IMG/VR virus record: IMGVR_UViG_3300005613_000002
Coordinates: 186,001 to 250,000 of that record
Reading direction: 5' to 3' (one strand)
Length of the DNA stretch: 64,000 bases
Below are positions 34,783 to 39,930 of this stretch, piece by piece. The position numbers and the translations under genes are program-made. Under the pieces are notes generated by a model. The model worked only from the letters and a program-made list of their open reading frames with translations, ran no database searches and was not told the origin of the DNA. Positions within the stretch are counted from its first letter, which is position 1. Every line of letters begins with the position of its first letter.

Positions 34783-35346
34783 TTAATTATAAATTAAACA
34801 ACATTTTTTATATTTTTTTCCTGACCCACAAGGGCAAGGTTCATTTCTACCAGCATTAATTGGTTTTGGTTCTTCAAAGGAATAATCTTTAACATCTTCT
34901 TCAATTCCATTAAGATGATTAATTTCATGTTGCCAAATTTGTCCTGAAAACCCTTTGAATATATTAACATGTGGTTGTCCTTCCATGTCATAGTATTTAA
35001 CCTTAACTGCACGTGAACGTTCAGCTACAATTATTTTATCTTTCCAAGTTAAACAACCTTCAACTTTAATATCTTTAAGTCCTAGATATTCAACAATTTC
35101 TGGATTAATAATAATTGACCAATCATCAATTACCATACTACGTAAAGCAAATGCACGTAAACTAAACCTATTTCCGTCTAATGCTGTTTGATTTGCAGCA
35201 AGACCAACTCCATTATCTTTAGTTTTTGCATATTCAAGAAATGCTGAGAGTTCGACTTTATGTTTTTCAATATAGTCATTAACTAATTCATGTTGAATTT
35301 TCCCAATTTCTGGTGTCTGTTCGTTTGGTATGATTGTAAATTTCAT
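34783..35346 (-). CDS. def: peptide deformylase with C-terminal SEC-C motif
   Basis: GVGLAANQ, EGCLT, QHEINHLNG; tail GRNEPCPCGSGKKYKKCC; ATG 35346 chosen over TTG 35367. Confidence 0.92.
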   Translation of the reverse strand: MKFTIIPNEQTPEIGKIQHELVNDYIEKHKVELSAFLEYAKTKDNGVGLAANQTALDGNRFSLRAFALRSMVIDDWSIIINPEIVEYLGLKDIKVEGCLTWKDKIIVAERSRAVKVKYYDMEGQPHVNIFKGFSGQIWQHEINHLNGIEEDVKDYSFEEPKPINAGRNEPCPCGSGKKYKKCCLIYN

Positions 35347-35357
35347 GTAATTATATT

Positions 35358-35555
35358 TTAATTCCAATTATCAAAAGCGAATTCCAAATGGATTTTACCA
35401 AATTTAACTATAAAATCTAAAAATGATTTTCCTGTTATTACCCAAAACAAAATATTAATTATAGCTGATAATCCAATTATAAACATCGTCACAATTATTA
35501 ATGGGATTGAAATTACTTTTGCTAATCGAATTAATATTAATTTAATTGTTTTCAT
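35358..35555 (-). CDS. small membrane protein
   Basis: Long hydrophobic stretch; first gene after promoter. Confidence 0.6.
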   Translation of the reverse strand: MKTIKLILIRLAKVISIPLIIVTMFIIGLSAIINILFWVITGKSFLDFIVKFGKIHLEFAFDNWN

Positions 35556-35827: not shown

Positions 35828-36172
35828 TTATTTAAGTTTAGTAATTTTATCATTTAATTCATCGACTTCTAATTTTAATAAATCAAGTTTTGTTTTTTCA
35901 ATTTCATATGCTTCAATTTTCTCTATGTTTTCTTTAGTATTTTCAGCAAATGCCCACCCATAATTACATCGATACTTTTCTCCAGTATCTTTAACTATAA
36001 ACTCATAACTATTGTTAGGGAGTTTAACTACATTTTTAACTATAGAATTTGGTAGAATAGGGAAACCACCAAGTTCATTGGGTTTCCAAACCATATCAAG
36101 TCTGTATATGTATTCCATATCAGATTTTGGGTTTTTATTCTCTTTATCAATTAAGAAATCGAAATATGCCAT
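35828..36172 (-). CDS. hypothetical protein
   Basis: TAATG coupling to radical SAM gene. Confidence 0.7.
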   Translation of the reverse strand: MAYFDFLIDKENKNPKSDMEYIYRLDMVWKPNELGGFPILPNSIVKNVVKLPNNSYEFIVKDTGEKYRCNYGWAFAENTKENIEKIEAYEIEKTKLDLLKLEVDELNDKITKLK

Positions 36173-36882
36173 TATAATTGTTTTAGTTTTCTATCCCAAC
36201 TTTGGGAAATTTCACCATCTACATGGAATTTATAACTTTGATATGGGTTTTCTTTAATTACTTTATCATTTCTTTTTATGATATGACCTCTATATTTTAA
36301 TCCTTCAATTTCATCAAACAACACCAATTTTTCAGCGTTTAGTGTATCTAAATAATAAACATTTTGCATCTGTCTAGTCCATTCATTACAAGAGGTTAAA
36401 GTGCTGAATTTCAGATGACCATAATTCTGGTATTTATCGATGAATGAATTAAGTTCATTAGTATTTGGTAATTGCTTTTTATGAATCAATGTAGTAATTG
36501 TAATATCACTAATAAAATCACATTGCATTGGTAATTCTTTTTGATTATAAAAAGAAATATTAAAACAATCAATAATACCATCAAGTTGTTTTATTATTGA
36601 AGGTTTAGTATAATTAGTTGTAAGAATACTTTTAAAACCATATTCTTTTACTAGTTTTGCAATTTCAACAATATTTGGATGTAATGTTGGTTCTCCACCA
36701 ACTATTAATATTTCTTTTAGGTTTAAAGATTTGGCTTTATTAAGTGCTTTAATTACATTTTCAAGTGTAATATACTCATATCTACCTCTGTACTTATCAA
36801 TACAAAATCTACAATATTTATTACATTCATGAGTTACAACTAATGACCCAAATTCTGTTGTTTTCACTTTTCCATCAAACAT
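36172..36882 (-). CDS. radical SAM protein
   Basis: CNKYCRFC (CxxxCxxC), IVGGEPTLHP, LTTNY. Confidence 0.9.
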   Translation of the reverse strand: MFDGKVKTTEFGSLVVTHECNKYCRFCIDKYRGRYEYITLENVIKALNKAKSLNLKEILIVGGEPTLHPNIVEIAKLVKEYGFKSILTTNYTKPSIIKQLDGIIDCFNISFYNQKELPMQCDFISDITITTLIHKKQLPNTNELNSFIDKYQNYGHLKFSTLTSCNEWTRQMQNVYYLDTLNAEKLVLFDEIEGLKYRGHIIKRNDKVIKENPYQSYKFHVDGEISQSWDRKLKQL

Positions 36883-38033: not shown

Positions 38034-38615
38034 TTATTGATAATTTTCTGTTTGAATTATTCCATATTTATGAAAATACCTAAGTGGTCGCCACTTGACA
38101 AGTTTTCCAGTTTTTTTATTTGTTACCCAGAAACCCCATTTATGATATGGTCTACTGCATAATAATATAGTCCAAGCACCACCTTTAGGGATACATAACC
38201 AATGTCTATCAGTTGCTTTAGAATACCAAATTGAATCTTGTGGATTGAAAAATGATTTCCATGAATTAAACATTCCTTCAACATGACAGAATGTTTCATT
38301 TCTAAAATGATGTGTACAACCTCTTTTTAAATCAGCACTCATATGTTTATCCATTGGTGTATCACCGATGTATGGTGTTGAATCTTCACGTGTCGGTTTA
38401 ACATTCCAATAATGACCTTTTAATACGATACTAATTAAATCAGTTGCATGGTCATGAAAGAATCTATTATCATCAGATTTAATCCAGTGATGAAGTCTAA
38501 AGGTATAACCAAATAGAATAAGTGTCCACCTATAAAGATATGGTGATTCAGGAATTCCCATTGGTTCTTTCCAACGTATTTGAAATATTCTATTAAATTT
38601 TCTAAATGGTTTCAT
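38034..38615 (-). CDS. cupin-like phage protein, probably leaderless
   Basis: PYL.RW...RLHH...DD...HDH...ISIVL.G.Y; ATG 13 nt after -10 C. Confidence 0.65.
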   Translation of the reverse strand: MKPFRKFNRIFQIRWKEPMGIPESPYLYRWTLILFGYTFRLHHWIKSDDNRFFHDHATDLISIVLKGHYWNVKPTREDSTPYIGDTPMDKHMSADLKRGCTHHFRNETFCHVEGMFNSWKSFFNPQDSIWYSKATDRHWLCIPKGGAWTILLCSRPYHKWGFWVTNKKTGKLVKWRPLRYFHKYGIIQTENYQ

Positions 38616-38621
38616 GATTAC

Positions 38622-38650
38622 TTATACGAAATTAAAGATAAAATGTTACA
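38622..38650 (-). promoter_or_regulatory. ECF-type phage promoter
   Basis: TGTAAC-N16-CGTATAA. Confidence 0.85.
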
Positions 38651-38662
38651 AATAATTAACAT

Positions 38663-38950
38663 TTAAATTTCGATATTACTTGTATCTGTAATCATATCAG
38701 GAAAAGGTTTAGACCATTGAGCACGTTTCATTGAGTTATTCTTTAACTTTAACTCATATGTTAGATTAGTTACGATCATTTTAGAAAAATCAATAACTTT
38801 AGCACTCCCTCGTCTTATATCACTAACTTGAAATTGTGTTGGTTTAATTTCTTTCTTATAAGAAAGAACATTACCACTAAGAGTTTGTGTTGAATCAATT
38901 AAATCTAAATACTTTTGAGGAATTCCTTCTTTTGAATTAATTTTTGACAT
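38663..38950 (-). CDS. hypothetical protein
   Basis: Co-oriented ORF. Confidence 0.6.
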   Translation of the reverse strand: MSKINSKEGIPQKYLDLIDSTQTLSGNVLSYKKEIKPTQFQVSDIRRGSAKVIDFSKMIVTNLTYELKLKNNSMKRAQWSKPFPDMITDTSNIEI

Positions 38951-38968
38951 TTTATTTGTTTTTAATTA

Positions 38969-39025
38969 AAAATGATAGAATTCAAGTGGGTAGTCATACT
39001 AACCATCTTAAATATCTATCATTTT
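38969..39025 (-). other. long imperfect hairpin right after tRNA-like gene
   Basis: AAAATGATAGA/TCTATCATTTT, ATTTAAG/CTTGAAT, TGG/CCA, TAGT/ACTA. Confidence 0.65.
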
Positions 39026-39031
39026 ATTTTG

Positions 39032-39238
39032 TCAACCCAACGGGGTTCGAACCAAACGTGACCTCCTGCATGTTAATACCGCCAATCTATTTCCGATTTC
39101 ATCCAAATTTCATGATATTAGCTTTATATCAATTCATATATTTTACTTTCTTATTTCCACCTTTAGTACCCCATTATCCGTAAACCGCTAAATAAACATT
39201 TAATTAGGACAGGCACTCTACCACTGAGCTATGGGTTG
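39032..39238 (-). tRNA. tRNA-like gene split by about 132 extra nt in the anticodon loop; identity unresolved
   Basis: Acceptor CAACCCA/TGGGTTG + A; TA-GCTC-AGTGGTA-GAGT D-arm; anticodon stem CCTGT/GCAGG; AGGTC; T-arm ACG(TTT)GG-TTCGAAC-CCCGT. Confidence 0.75.
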
Positions 39239-39248
39239 ATGTTTAAAT

Positions 39249-39458
39249 AAAGTAGATTAGGTAGGCTTTCGCATTATTACTTATGCACTTTCGTAATGTT
39301 ACCTTGATGGTTTGTTTCGCATTTCTATTGATTAAACAAAACCAGAGCATCATATTATCACTACCCACGAACTATCTTTCACTCATTGTGATGTTCAAGA
39401 GTCAGTCATGACTATTGTTCCCTATTTCACGACACAAATCTATGGGTTCTACTACTTT
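39249..39458 (-). ncRNA. 210-nt structured RNA of unknown class
   Basis: Closed by AAAGTAG/CTACTTT; internal ACCCA/TGGGT, AGTCA/TGACT, TCAC/GTGA, TGGTT.TTGTTT/AAACAAACCA, GGTAG/CTACC; several GAAA loops; no ORF. Confidence 0.6.
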
Positions 39459-39465
39459 AAATTTT

Positions 39466-39483
39466 CAATATTTTAAAGAACTG
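39466..39483 (-). promoter_or_regulatory. boxA-like antitermination element
   Basis: CAGTTCTTTAAAATATTG about 10 nt after predicted +1, resembling rRNA-leader boxA (GYTCTTT.A.A). Confidence 0.4.
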
Positions 39484-39497
39484 TTTTCTTATAATAC

Positions 39498-39526
39498 TTA
39501 TACGTTAGAAATAAAAAAATGTTACA
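39498..39526 (-). promoter_or_regulatory. ECF-type promoter of ncRNA/tRNA-like locus
   Basis: TGTAAC-N16-CGTATAA, preceded by a weak hairpin and T7. Confidence 0.85.
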
Positions 39527-39542
39527 AAAAAAGTGAACTATT

Positions 39543-39719
39543 TTATTTAACTTCACCAATTATTGATTCAATTCTTTTGATTATATTCAACGTATTATTA
39601 TATGTGTGAATTTTTGCGGTATGACTATATTCTGAAATATTAGGACTATTCATTACATCTGAACGATCTTGATTTTCATTTTTTAATTCTCTAACTAGTT
39701 TTTCGAATTCTAATTTCAT
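39543..39719 (-). CDS. small protein, 58 aa
   Basis: MKLEFEKLVREL...; not in ORF track. Confidence 0.55.
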   Translation of the reverse strand: MKLEFEKLVRELKNENQDRSDVMNSPNISEYSHTAKIHTYNNTLNIIKRIESIIGEVK

Positions 39720-39729
39720 TCTATTTATT

Positions 39730-39930
39730 TTAAATTAAAAACATACTTTTCCATGTAGACTCTCCACATATTTCAGTTATAACAACACTGAAATCCATAT
39801 CTTGTGTTTCTTTCCAGTTCCATGTAATTAGATTAAAGAATATTGTAAATAATAATAAGAAAATCCAAAAACACCAACCTAAAATAAATTTAAGATAATA
39901 TGCGACAATATATTTAAAAAATTTTCTCAT
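39730..39930 (-). CDS. small membrane protein
   Basis: Hydrophobic helix. Confidence 0.6.
   Translation of the reverse strand: MRKFFKYIVAYYLKFILGWCFWIFLLLFTIFFNLITWNWKETQDMDFSVVITEICGESTWKSMFLI

What the first reader, a model, noticed from the sequence alone, without database searches (positions are those of the whole stretch)
39032..39238. tRNA gene split by a 132-nt anticodon-loop insertion that fits no known intron class
Seen: textbook 5' half (acceptor, GCTC-AGTGGTA-GAGT, CCTGT) and 3' half (GCAGG, AGGTC, T-arm with a TTT bulge, complementary acceptor) separated by a 139-nt loop. It is too short for a group I intron and shows no P7 core, usable terminal G or bulge-helix-bulge. Depending on junctions, splicing could yield anticodon TAC, AAC or TAA, each with atypical C33. 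It is followed at once by a 57-nt hairpin. Automated callers would probably miss it.
Basis: partly seen in the sequence, partly recalled or inferred. Interest (0 to 1): 0.8.

Follow-up and report, generated by a model that had tools for sequence, protein, structure and literature searches.

The report
Jumbo-phage valine tRNA mimic with structured insert
A giant bacteriophage carries a conserved valine-tRNA-like gene whose anticodon loop holds a folded 132-base RNA module of no known intron or RNA family, giving the unexplained "tRNA introns" of huge phages a defined family to test.

Summary
On the minus strand, 39032-39238 encodes a complete tRNA cloverleaf interrupted by 132 nt. The window lies in a 321.6-kb jumbo phage. 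It is not a decayed one-off: more than 30 related phage contigs carry the same gene, usually just upstream of the same cupin gene. All share C1-G72, A73 and a fixed NAC (valine) triplet before the 3' anticodon-stem strand. The extra sequence always sits on the 5' side of the loop and ranges from 1 to about 155 nt. Many members also have a bulge or insert in the T stem; the window has UUU. The 132-nt insert is as conserved as the tRNA body and has four covarying helices that form a three-way junction with the anticodon stem. It matches no Rfam family and is not group I, group II, bulge-helix-bulge or a known small ribozyme. Across the family U33 and purine-37 are not conserved, whereas A35, C36 and A73 are invariant. 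I therefore read it as a non-canonical tRNA-Val mimic carrying an RNA module. Whether the module is retained (my preference) or spliced out is unresolved, because no RNA data were available.

The parts
39032..39238 (-). Whole tRNA-Val(AAC)-like gene, 207 nt from C1 to A73; no CCA is encoded
   Evidence: Sequence; ARAGORN -i call; cloverleaf covariation in homologues
39209..39238 (-). 5' body: acceptor strand, U8 A9, D arm and the 5' strand of the anticodon stem (CCUGU)
39077..39208 (-). 132-nt structured insert, between the anticodon-stem 5' strand and the heptamer UUAACAU
   Evidence: Covariance model R1 and pair counts; about as conserved as the tRNA body
39170..39208 (-). Pa domain. The outer helix pairs 39206-39208 with 39170-39172. 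It encloses a hairpin whose loop UUUAGCGG (39185-39192) is conserved
   Evidence: All three outer pairs covary: C-G, G-C, U-A, A-U
39165..39169 (-). Pb 5' strand (GUACU). It pairs with 39076-39080 and closes the rest of the insert next to the heptamer
   Evidence: All five pairs show double changes on alignment A7
39143..39158 (-). Conserved single-stranded purine-rich motif GGAAAUAAGAAAGUAA
   Evidence: Nearly invariant in WIN, L042, L038, L036, L003, L048 and L175
39113..39131 (-). Pc hairpin: 6-bp stem and a 7-nt loop AAAGCUA. The loop core RGCY is self-complementary in all members
   Evidence: Five of six pairs show double changes; loop comparison
39088..39107 (-). Pd region. A short helix pairs 39105-39107 with 39092-39094 around the conserved GAUGAAAUCGGAAAUA
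   Evidence: 3 pairs, 88.5% of cells paired
39070..39076 (-). Heptamer UUAACAU: an anticodon-loop equivalent (U33, AAC, A37, U38), left as the single strand of the three-way junction
   Evidence: A35 and C36 are invariant in all 32 family members, while N34 varies
39032..39069 (-). 3' body: anticodon-stem 3' strand GCAGG, AGGUC, T arm with the UUU bulge between positions 51 and 52, acceptor strand, A73
   Evidence: The same bulge occurs in L042, L038, L046, L048 and L027; longer inserts sit at or near that site in L009, L031 and L036
38968..39025 (-). Long hairpin followed by UUUUU: a terminator-like end of the transcription unit
   Evidence: MFE fold. The simple terminator scan did not call it
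39249..39458 (-). Conserved upstream RNA-like element of about 210 nt with closing stem AAAGUAG/CUACUUU.
   Evidence: Conserved in L042 and in a second copy in this genome whose closing stem covaries
39494..39528 (-). Promoter-like motif TTTGTAACA, 15 nt, CGTATAAGTAT
   Evidence: The same motif precedes the homologous units in L042, L036 and L175 and the paralogous element. Inference only
38034..38615 (-). 193-aa cupin-fold protein gene, the conserved downstream neighbour of the tRNA-like gene
   Evidence: Found with the element nearby in at least 24 of 30 IMG/VR loci; phrog_4786; AF2 model and fold search

Best explanation
It is a real, single-copy, conserved gene for a non-canonical tRNA-Val-like RNA (a tRNA mimic) of a 322-kb jumbo phage. 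Shown: the tRNA body is under structural selection. A 132-nt module with four covarying helices (Pa, Pb, Pc, Pd) and conserved purine-rich single strands sits on the 5' side of the anticodon loop. Pa and Pb form a three-way junction with the anticodon stem, leaving the heptamer UUAACAU single-stranded. Orthologues in more than 30 phage contigs keep C1-G72, A73, A35 and C36. Inferred: the RNA is transcribed from its own promoter together with an upstream element of about 210 nt and ends at a hairpin plus U-run. It is cut out like a tRNA (RNase P at C1, 3' trimming, CCA addition). It is recognised by valyl-tRNA synthetase through A35, C36 and A73. The module and the UUU T-stem bulge stay in the mature RNA as expansion segments, so it is not an ordinary elongator tRNA. 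On this reading the tRNA shape supplies processing, stability and synthetase recognition, and the module carries the specific but unknown activity. The co-located cupin protein is one candidate partner.
For: The gene is real and conserved: ARAGORN -i and cloverleaf covariation in 15 of 21 pairs. Orthologues were recovered through the neighbouring cupin gene in IMG/VR, JGI and Logan contigs. Module structure: model R1, built from 5 sequences, recovers L048, L004/L049 and L031 at E<=0.003. On that alignment 93.6% of cells pair, 20 of 22 pairs have double changes, 0 of 500 shuffles reach this, and slid controls give 32-54%. The insert is as conserved as the tRNA body: 87% against 91% for WIN-L042, 88% against 75% for L038-L036. 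Arguments for a mimic rather than a decoder: in 32 members A35-C36 and A73 never change, but N34 is A15/U9/G6/C2, N33 is U in only 15, and N37 is a pyrimidine in 9. Members without the module have 8-nt (L027, L024) or 12-nt (L028c) loops. Removing Pa through Pb from L036 would leave an 8-nt loop that differs from L027's only in its first base. Loop length runs almost continuously from 8 to 160 nt. A second expansion site lies 3' of the variable loop: a 3-nt bulge after position 51 of the T stem in six members including the window, too short to be an intron; 16-31 nt at the same position in L031 and L009; about 9 nt near it in L036; and about 85 nt just before an intact T stem in group B. The genome already has a canonical tRNA-Val(UAC).
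Against: There is no transcript evidence at all: no RNA run was listed. In this phage the heptamer UUAACAU is a perfect anticodon loop. AAC matches GUU, which is 57% of valine codons, and the genome has another A34 tRNA, Leu-AAG. A spliced decoding tRNA therefore remains viable here. Related phages carry about 100-nt inserts at position 33/34 in otherwise canonical Arg and Ser tRNA genes. That suggests this phage group has some way of removing inserts. The phage encodes Rnl1-like and Rnl2-like RNA ligases. Synthetase recognition, RNase P processing and any link to the cupin are inferred, not tested. The covariation counts were made on a model-fitted alignment, which leans towards the structure.
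Confidence: 0.45

Rival explanations
1. The module is a true intervening sequence of the 'enigmatic huge-phage tRNA intron' kind. An unidentified endonuclease removes it and the phage Rnl1/Rnl2-type ligase seals the halves, giving a tRNA-Val(AAC) that reads the phage's dominant GUU codon.
For: Removing the 132 nt gives a 76-nt tRNA-Val(AAC) with loop UUAACAU. GUU is 57% of valine codons and Leu-AAG shows that A34 tRNAs are used. An Rnl1-like ligase lies inside the tRNA array, there is an Rnl2-like ligase elsewhere, and an Rnl2-like gene sits just upstream of the L038 orthologue. Related phages have inserts of about 100 nt at 33/34 in canonical tRNAs. The module is present in some orthologues and absent in others. 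Lak megaphage tRNA introns are a precedent (PMC6784885).
Against: No endonuclease candidate was found: there is no tRNA-splicing endonuclease or RtcB gene and no bulge-helix-bulge. Protein-spliced tRNA introns normally do not need conserved intron sequence, yet this one is as conserved as the exons. Close relatives would give loops with U37, C37 or A33. The T-stem bulge would remain. Module-free orthologues have 8-nt loops.
Confidence: 0.3
2. The module is a new small self-splicing or self-cleaving ribozyme intron of about 130 nt. After self-cleavage the ends would be joined by a host or phage ligase.
For: Covarying helices around strongly conserved unpaired purine-rich strands resemble a catalytic core. 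The insertion site is fixed. No protein candidate for cleavage was found.
Against: No match to any Rfam ribozyme or intron model at E<=10. There is no conserved terminal G or U.G at the junctions, and the P1-like pairing fails in L031 and L026. The fold is no more stable than shuffled sequence, z = -0.3. The prior is low.
Confidence: 0.1
3. The tRNA shape is mainly a processing signal. RNase P and RNase Z cuts there would release the upstream 210-nt RNA and define the 5' end of the cupin mRNA, and the RNA itself would have no further role.
For: The element ends 0-50 nt before the cupin start codon in many loci. In the window it directly follows a conserved upstream element.
Against: This does not explain the invariant A35-C36, or a 132-nt module with conserved sequence and structure. 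In the window a hairpin plus U-run and another ORF separate the element from the cupin gene.
Confidence: 0.08
4. It is a decayed tRNA pseudogene disrupted by junk or by a remnant of a mobile element.
For: Default callers miss it. The T stem has a bulge.
Against: There are compensatory changes in every stem of the body and of the insert. It is conserved across phages whose cupin proteins are only 47-84% identical to this one. It is single-copy in the genome.
Confidence: 0.02
5. It is a degenerate or miniature group I intron in a tRNA gene.
For: The location in a bacterial-type tRNA anticodon loop is where group I introns are found.
Against: At 132 nt it is well below known tRNA group I introns (about 200 nt or more, from my own knowledge). 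There is no RF00028 hit at E<=10, no conserved terminal G and no P3-P9 core. The site is 5' of the anticodon.
Confidence: 0.02

Closest known systems
'Enigmatic' introns in tRNA genes of Lak megaphages and other alternatively coded jumbo phages (Devoto et al. 2019, PMC6784885; PMC13037316)
   Same: A phage-encoded tRNA gene with an insertion in the anticodon loop. It is missed by bacterial-mode callers, has no Rfam class, and the insert sequence is conserved between related phages.
   Different: This phage fits the standard code. The insert has a defined covarying fold and lies 5' of the anticodon. The host tRNA is itself non-canonical (T-stem bulge, C1-G72, variable 33 and 37). Here the gene is defined as an orthologous family linked to a cupin gene. 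Those papers did not establish splicing either.
Bacterial tRNA group I introns (cyanobacterial tRNA-Leu(UAA), Azoarcus tRNA-Ile)
   Same: An intervening RNA with conserved structure in the anticodon loop of a bacterial-type tRNA gene.
   Different: It is much shorter. There is no group I core, no terminal G and no Rfam match. Its position is 31/32-32/33.
Archaeal tRNA introns at non-canonical positions (bulge-helix-bulge, cut by the splicing endonuclease)
   Same: Extra sequence at several sites of the tRNA across the family: anticodon loop, variable/T region and D loop.
   Different: There is no bulge-helix-bulge at the junctions and no endonuclease gene. The phage carries a tmRNA, which points to a bacterial host. 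The insert sequence is conserved, which such introns do not require.
tRNA mimics with retained extra domains: tmRNA, bacterial and phage Y-RNA-like YrlA, and the valine-accepting tRNA-like end of turnip yellow mosaic virus (from my own knowledge)
   Same: A tRNA-shaped part is used for processing or synthetase recognition and is joined to a functional non-tRNA domain. The plant-virus case is also valine-specific through its anticodon-loop bases.
   Different: There is no sequence or model match: ARAGORN finds no tmRNA here and Rfam gives no YrlA hit at this locus. This RNA keeps a full cloverleaf including the D arm and anticodon stem. Charging with valine is untested.
Engineered 'tRNA scaffold' RNAs, in which a structured RNA is inserted in place of the anticodon loop for stable expression (from my own knowledge)
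   Same: The architecture is identical: a structured RNA is grafted onto the anticodon stem of an otherwise intact tRNA.
   Different: This one is natural and conserved, and it retains the anticodon heptamer beside the insert.

Membership tests
Canonical bacterial elongator tRNA (Rfam RF00005) | Match to the tRNA covariance model or to a default tRNA caller | tested here: not met
   No RF00005 hit at gathering score or at E<=10, and default ARAGORN finds nothing. It is called only after the 132 nt are removed.
Canonical bacterial elongator tRNA (Rfam RF00005) | Acceptor, D, anticodon and T stems kept by compensatory change; G18 G19 and a UUCRA T loop | tested here: met
   15 of 21 pairs show double changes. 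D-loop GG and T loop UUCGAAC are present.
Canonical bacterial elongator tRNA (Rfam RF00005) | 7-nt anticodon loop with U33 and purine 37; uninterrupted 5-bp T stem | tested here: not met
   The encoded loop is 139 nt. Across 32 orthologues U33 occurs in only 15 and position 37 is a pyrimidine in 9. Module-free members have 8- or 12-nt loops. The T stem has a UUU bulge.
Group I intron | P3-P9 core with a guanosine-binding site; match to RF00028 | tested here: not met
   No hit at E<=10 on 38500-39800. The helices found (Pa-Pd) do not form such a core.
Group I intron | Conserved terminal G, and a U.G pair at the 5' splice site within P1 | tested here: not met
   The last insert base is A. A possible U.G/P1-like pairing exists in the closest members but fails in L031 and L026.
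Group II intron | Six-domain structure of several hundred nt with domain V | tested here: not met
   The insert is 132 nt and matches no Rfam group II model.
Archaeal/eukaryal bulge-helix-bulge tRNA intron | Two 3-nt bulges separated by a 4-bp helix at the splice sites | tested here: not met
   The junction is a three-way junction with strands of 1 nt, 0 nt and 7 nt.
Archaeal/eukaryal bulge-helix-bulge tRNA intron | Splicing endonuclease, and RtcB or Trl1-type ligase, available | tested here: not met
   No PF01974 and no PF01139 in the complete phage genome. The host is unknown, so host enzymes could not be tested.
Small self-cleaving ribozymes (hammerhead, twister, pistol, hatchet, HDV-like) | Match to the family model or core motifs | tested here: not met
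   No Rfam hit at E<=10. The junction strands do not match the hammerhead core, by inspection.
tmRNA | tRNA-like domain without an anticodon arm, plus a tag reading frame and pseudoknots | tested here: not met
   ARAGORN finds no tmRNA in the window. The phage's tmRNA is elsewhere, at genome 132007-132367. This RNA has a D arm and an anticodon stem.
Y-RNA-like (YrlA) | Match to RF02553 | tested here: not met
   No hit at the locus. In related loci there are only sub-threshold hits over ordinary tRNAs.
Huge-phage 'enigmatic tRNA introns' (a descriptive class, Devoto 2019) | Phage tRNA gene with an anticodon-loop insertion, no known intron class, conserved among related phages | tested here: met
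   literature.
Huge-phage 'enigmatic tRNA introns' (a descriptive class, Devoto 2019) | Insert actually removed from the RNA | not testable with these tools
   No RNA run was listed. No joined-exon or insert-free allele of the window's exon type was found in viral or metagenome contigs.
Valine-accepting tRNA or tRNA mimic | ValRS identity elements A35, C36 and A73 (established for E. coli tRNA-Val; from my own knowledge) | tested here: met
   All three are invariant in 32 members while N34 varies freely. For the group B members the 3' stem strand was chosen with the NAC criterion, so those rows are partly circular.
Valine-accepting tRNA or tRNA mimic | Aminoacylation with valine | not testable with these tools
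   This needs biochemistry. The phage encodes no class Ia synthetase of its own.

The most novel reading that the evidence does not exclude
The 132-nt module is a new class of small catalytic intron, self-splicing or self-cleaving with ligase sealing, that targets the 5' side of tRNA anticodon loops in jumbo phages. It would be smaller than any known self-splicing intron.
Probability: 0.1. Interest if true: 0.9.

Novelty: new variant of a known kind. Interest (0 to 1): 0.6.

Why it matters
Insertions in the tRNA genes of huge phages have been noted since 2019 as 'enigmatic introns', with no mechanism, no structure and no family definition. This locus provides four things. It gives an orthologous family traceable across many jumbo phages. 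It gives a secondary-structure model supported by covariation. It gives a fixed insertion site. It also gives a conservation pattern that separates synthetase recognition (A35, C36, A73 kept) from ribosomal decoding (33, 34, 37 free). Together these turn a vague annotation problem into direct experiments: is the RNA spliced, is it charged with valine, and what binds the module? If the module is retained, this is a natural 'tRNA scaffold' RNA and a new kind of phage tRNA mimic. If it is spliced, it is a new intron type in bacterial viruses.

Tried and rejected
- Rfam found nothing for the element, at gathering score on the whole window, at E<=10 on the locus, and at E<=0.5 on seven related loci.
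- BLAST of the locus against GenBank phages gave no match.
- An exact search for the 5' junction in IMG/VR gave none.
- Folding energy is uninformative: z = -0.3 for the gene and -0.9 for the upstream element.
- A group I-like P1 with a U.G pair at the 5' junction fits the closest members but is not conserved, so I rejected it.
- A kissing interaction between the Pa-hairpin loop (UAGC) and the Pc loop (GCUA) fits WIN, L042 and L038 but shows no consistent covariation in L003, L031 or L025. I left it as an idea.
- Pairing of the insert's UCGGA with the T loop involves only invariant bases, so it cannot be tested.
- Public runs: one weak DNA holder and no RNA run.
- The insert motif pattern gave 92 hits in species-representative genomes and more than 120 in metagenome contigs. 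The covariance model accepted only L052, L153 and L175, so the rest are chance.
- A search for insert-free or joined-exon versions of the window's exons found none.
- The cupin has no Pfam or PDB sequence match and only a generic cupin/thiol-dioxygenase-like fold with TM below 0.5, so no function can be assigned.
- The phage genome has no RtcB, no splicing endonuclease and no class Ia synthetase.

Full report
**Observation**

The feature lies on the minus strand. Read 5' to 3', 39238 to 39032 gives a complete cloverleaf:
- acceptor strand CAACCCA, then UA;
- D arm GCUC/AGUGGUA/GAGU, then G;
- anticodon-stem strand CCUGU, 139 nt, then the complementary GCAGG;
- AGGUC;
- a T arm ACG-UUU-GG / UUCGAAC / CC-CGU;
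- acceptor strand UGGGUUG and A73.

Default ARAGORN and Rfam find nothing in the window. Rfam at E<=10 on 38500-39800 gives only three chance-level hits to unrelated families. When the 132 nt are removed in silico, default ARAGORN calls a 76-nt tRNA-Val(AAC).

**Genome**

The window is bases 186001-250000 of a 321,624-bp IMG/VR virus record with direct terminal repeats. GC content is about 27%. The standard code fits: ORFs of at least 100 codons cover 90% of the genome. The phage carries 46 other tRNA genes, a tmRNA and a CUA-anticodon tRNA, all at 43-44 kb and 122-160 kb. The candidate stands alone at 225 kb, co-oriented with a run of small minus-strand genes.

The candidate is followed by a long hairpin plus UUUUU at 38968-39025. 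After that come a 95-aa ORF and a 193-aa cupin-type gene at 38034-38615. About 2.7 kb further on lies a peptide deformylase with a SEC-C motif.

**Relatives**

Using the cupin protein as a handle returned 30 loci from jumbo-phage contigs of up to 676 kb. In at least 24 of them a tRNA-shaped gene of 74-228 nt lies close by. It usually ends 0-50 nt before the cupin start codon. Closer relatives came from metagenome and Logan contigs encoding cupins 70-78% identical to the window's: L036, L038, L042, L046, L048, L050, L051 and later L175. L042 has the same acceptor stem as the window, with 91% identity in the body and 87% in the insert.

All members share three features:
- They start with C1 paired to G72, followed by A73 and usually C.
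- The three bases at the anticodon position, counted back from the 3' stem strand, are always NAC (valine). A35 and C36 are invariant. N34 is A in 15, U in 9, G in 6 and C in 2.
- The extra sequence is always on the 5' side of the loop.

The total loop length is:
- 8 nt in L027 and L024, and 12 nt in L028c;
- 28-71 nt in a second subgroup ('group B': L005-L008, L010, L011, L013, L015, L017, L032);
- 51 nt in L009 and 77 nt in L022;
- 109-160 nt in the window's subgroup ('group A').

In nine homologues, 15 of the 21 cloverleaf pairs show compensatory double changes. This is not a decayed or unique insertion.

**The insert is a structured module**

Among the group A members the insert is as conserved as the tRNA body. 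It contains near-invariant motifs: a loop UUUAGCGG, the single strands GGAAAUAAGAAAGUAA and GAUGAAAUCGGAAAUA, and a hairpin loop with a self-complementary RGCY core.

Four helices can be traced.
- Pa starts one base after the anticodon stem.
- Pb starts immediately after Pa and pairs with the bases just before the heptamer.
- Pc and Pd lie inside Pb.

A covariance model built from five sequences recovers members that were not used to build it: L048 at E = 1.6e-7, L004 and L049 at 3.8e-4, and L031 at 2.8e-3. On the resulting alignment 93.6% of cells are paired and 20 of 22 pairs have changes on both sides. No shuffle out of 500 reaches these values, and sliding the partners by 1-3 columns gives 32-54% paired. 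The alignment is fitted to the model, which favours the structure, but the margin is large.

Pa, Pb and the anticodon stem form a three-way junction. Its only long single strand is the heptamer UUAACAU. The module is single-copy in this genome. The model accepted none of the 92 chance pattern hits in species-representative bacterial genomes.

**What it is not**

- It is not a group I intron. There is no model hit, and no conserved terminal G or P1. It is also about 70 nt shorter than the shortest tRNA group I introns I know of.
- It is not a group II intron.
- It is not a known self-cleaving ribozyme.
- It is not a bulge-helix-bulge intron. The junction geometry is wrong, and the complete phage genome has no splicing endonuclease and no RtcB.
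- It is not a tmRNA or a Y-RNA-like RNA.

**Intron or retained expansion?**

No RNA data could be found, so this rests on inference.

For splicing:
- In this phage the heptamer is a perfect anticodon loop.
- AAC matches GUU, which is 57% of valine codons.
- The genome uses another A34 tRNA, Leu-AAG.
- It encodes an Rnl1-like ligase inside the tRNA array and an Rnl2-like ligase elsewhere.
- Related phages L005 and L008 carry about 100-nt inserts at 33/34 in otherwise canonical Arg and Ser genes. Those inserts hold a nested T-arm minihelix, much as Devoto et al. described for Lak phages.

For retention:
- Across the family, the positions needed by the ribosome are not kept. U33 is present in 15 of 32 members and position 37 is a pyrimidine in 9. 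The positions known to specify valyl-tRNA synthetase recognition (A35, C36, A73) are invariant.
- The 'module-free' members still have 8- or 12-nt loops. Deleting Pa through Pb from L036 would leave an 8-nt loop that differs from L027's only in its first base.
- Loop length forms a near-continuum from 8 to 160 nt.
- A second expansion site lies 3' of the variable loop. Six members, including the window, have a 3-nt bulge after position 51 of the T stem, which cannot be an intron. L031 and L009 have 16-31 nt at the same position, and L036 has about 9 extra nt near it. Group B has about 85 nt just before an intact T stem.
- Protein-spliced tRNA introns do not normally need conserved intron sequence, yet this insert is as conserved as the body.

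I therefore prefer a non-canonical valine-tRNA mimic that keeps its module (0.45). The alternatives are protein-dependent splicing (0.30) and a new ribozyme intron (0.10). Either way the mature RNA is unlikely to be an ordinary elongator tRNA.

**Likely working**

The following steps are inferred.
1. Transcription starts at a promoter-like motif: TTTGTAACA, 15 nt, CGTATAAGTAT at 39494-39528. The same motif recurs before the homologous units in L042, L036 and L175.
2. The transcript runs through a conserved upstream element of about 210 nt and the tRNA-like gene, and stops at the hairpin plus U-run.
3. RNase P cuts at C1, the 3' end is trimmed and CCA is added.
4. ValRS recognises A35, C36 and A73.
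5. The module, the T-stem bulge, or both keep the RNA out of normal decoding, and the module provides an unknown binding or regulatory activity.

The conserved cupin neighbour is a candidate partner, but its fold is generic and gives no functional clue.

**Comparison and novelty**

The closest published description is the 'enigmatic introns' of Lak megaphage tRNAs (PMC6784885), together with the statement that most alternatively coded jumbo phages have tRNA 'introns' (PMC13037316). Neither paper gives a structure, a family or a mechanism. I found nothing in the searched literature describing this valine-tRNA-like family or its module.

In how it may work, it resembles natural tRNA mimics with extra domains and the engineered tRNA scaffold. 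It is a member of none of those families. I rate it a new variant of a known but unexplained kind.

**Limits**

- There is no expression evidence and the host is unknown.
- The covariation statistics rest on 11 distinct sequences.
- The assignment of the anticodon stem in group B used the NAC criterion.
- ValRS recognition and RNase P processing are inferred from general knowledge.

Noticed in passing
window 39249-39458 (minus strand); second copy at L002:1505-1737 (minus strand) = genome about 252.74-252.97 kb; homologue at L042:668-888: A conserved RNA-like element of about 210 nt lies directly upstream of the tRNA-like gene. Its closing stem AAAGUAG/CUACUUU covaries in the genome's second copy (AAUGUAG/CUACAUU). 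Conserved blocks include GUGAUGAUAUGAUGCUCUG and two GAAA-capped hairpins. Each copy has the same promoter-like motif.
   Followed up: partly
G000:C1:122564-148015 (outside the window; tRNA array): The phage encodes long-variable-arm (class II-like) tRNAs for His, Gln, Trp, Cys, Asn and Met. Several of the arms are capped by GAAA. For His, Gln and Asn they sit beside normal-length copies of the same isoacceptor.
   Followed up: no
G000:C1:148144-148272 (outside the window): Another tRNA-shaped gene has an odd anticodon loop (UGAUAAC) and a region of about 57 nt between the anticodon stem and the T arm. ARAGORN -i calls it Leu(taa) with a 33-nt intron. It shows that expansions at the variable site also occur in this genome.
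   Followed up: no
G000:C1:129984-130057, 151233-151303, 159544-159617 and 132007-132367 (outside the window): There are tRNAs with 6-nt and 8-nt anticodon loops, a CUA-anticodon (amber-reading) tRNA and a tmRNA. Yet ORF statistics fit the standard code, and only 16 of 217 long ORFs end in TAG.
   Followed up: partly
L005:2398-2576, L005:2685-2861, L008:3211-3386, L008:7241-7398: Otherwise canonical Arg, Ser/Asn and Pro tRNA genes of related jumbo phages carry 80-105-nt inserts just 5' of the anticodon. In the first three the insert follows a canonical C32 U33 and begins with a shared AUACRG...GAAA(A)CG hairpin. All contain a nested acceptor/T-arm minihelix (GUUCGAAU). This is a different insert class from the window's.
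   Followed up: partly
L006:3768-3957, L007:3587-3791, L010:2705-2908, L011:3759-3959, L017:3600-3805: The group B orthologues have a roughly 40-nt hairpin carrying a conserved CCAUGACGAUGG (or CCGUGACGAUGG) tip in the anticodon loop. They also have about 85 nt between the variable loop and the T arm, with conserved UUCUAGA and GAAGUAGUU. The UGACGA/UGAUGA-type motifs look like C-box or kink-loop motifs, but this was not tested.
   Followed up: no
L038:2084-2266: Immediately upstream of the L038 orthologue lies a second tRNA-shaped gene. It has a Leu-like D arm, a stem with a 4-nt loop in place of the anticodon loop and about 100 nt of extra sequence. An Rnl2-type RNA ligase gene lies about 650 nt upstream of it.
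   Followed up: no
window 34783-35367 (minus strand) and 36172-36882 (minus strand): A peptide deformylase fused to a SEC-C motif and a radical-SAM protein lie downstream in the same gene run. The order cupin then deformylase recurs in L036 and L038.
   Followed up: partly
L033 (G000:C1:135924-136481) and L034 (G000:C1:270596-271156): A T4 Rnl1-like RNA ligase sits inside the tRNA array and an Rnl2-like ligase lies elsewhere in the genome. The genome has no RtcB.
   Followed up: partly
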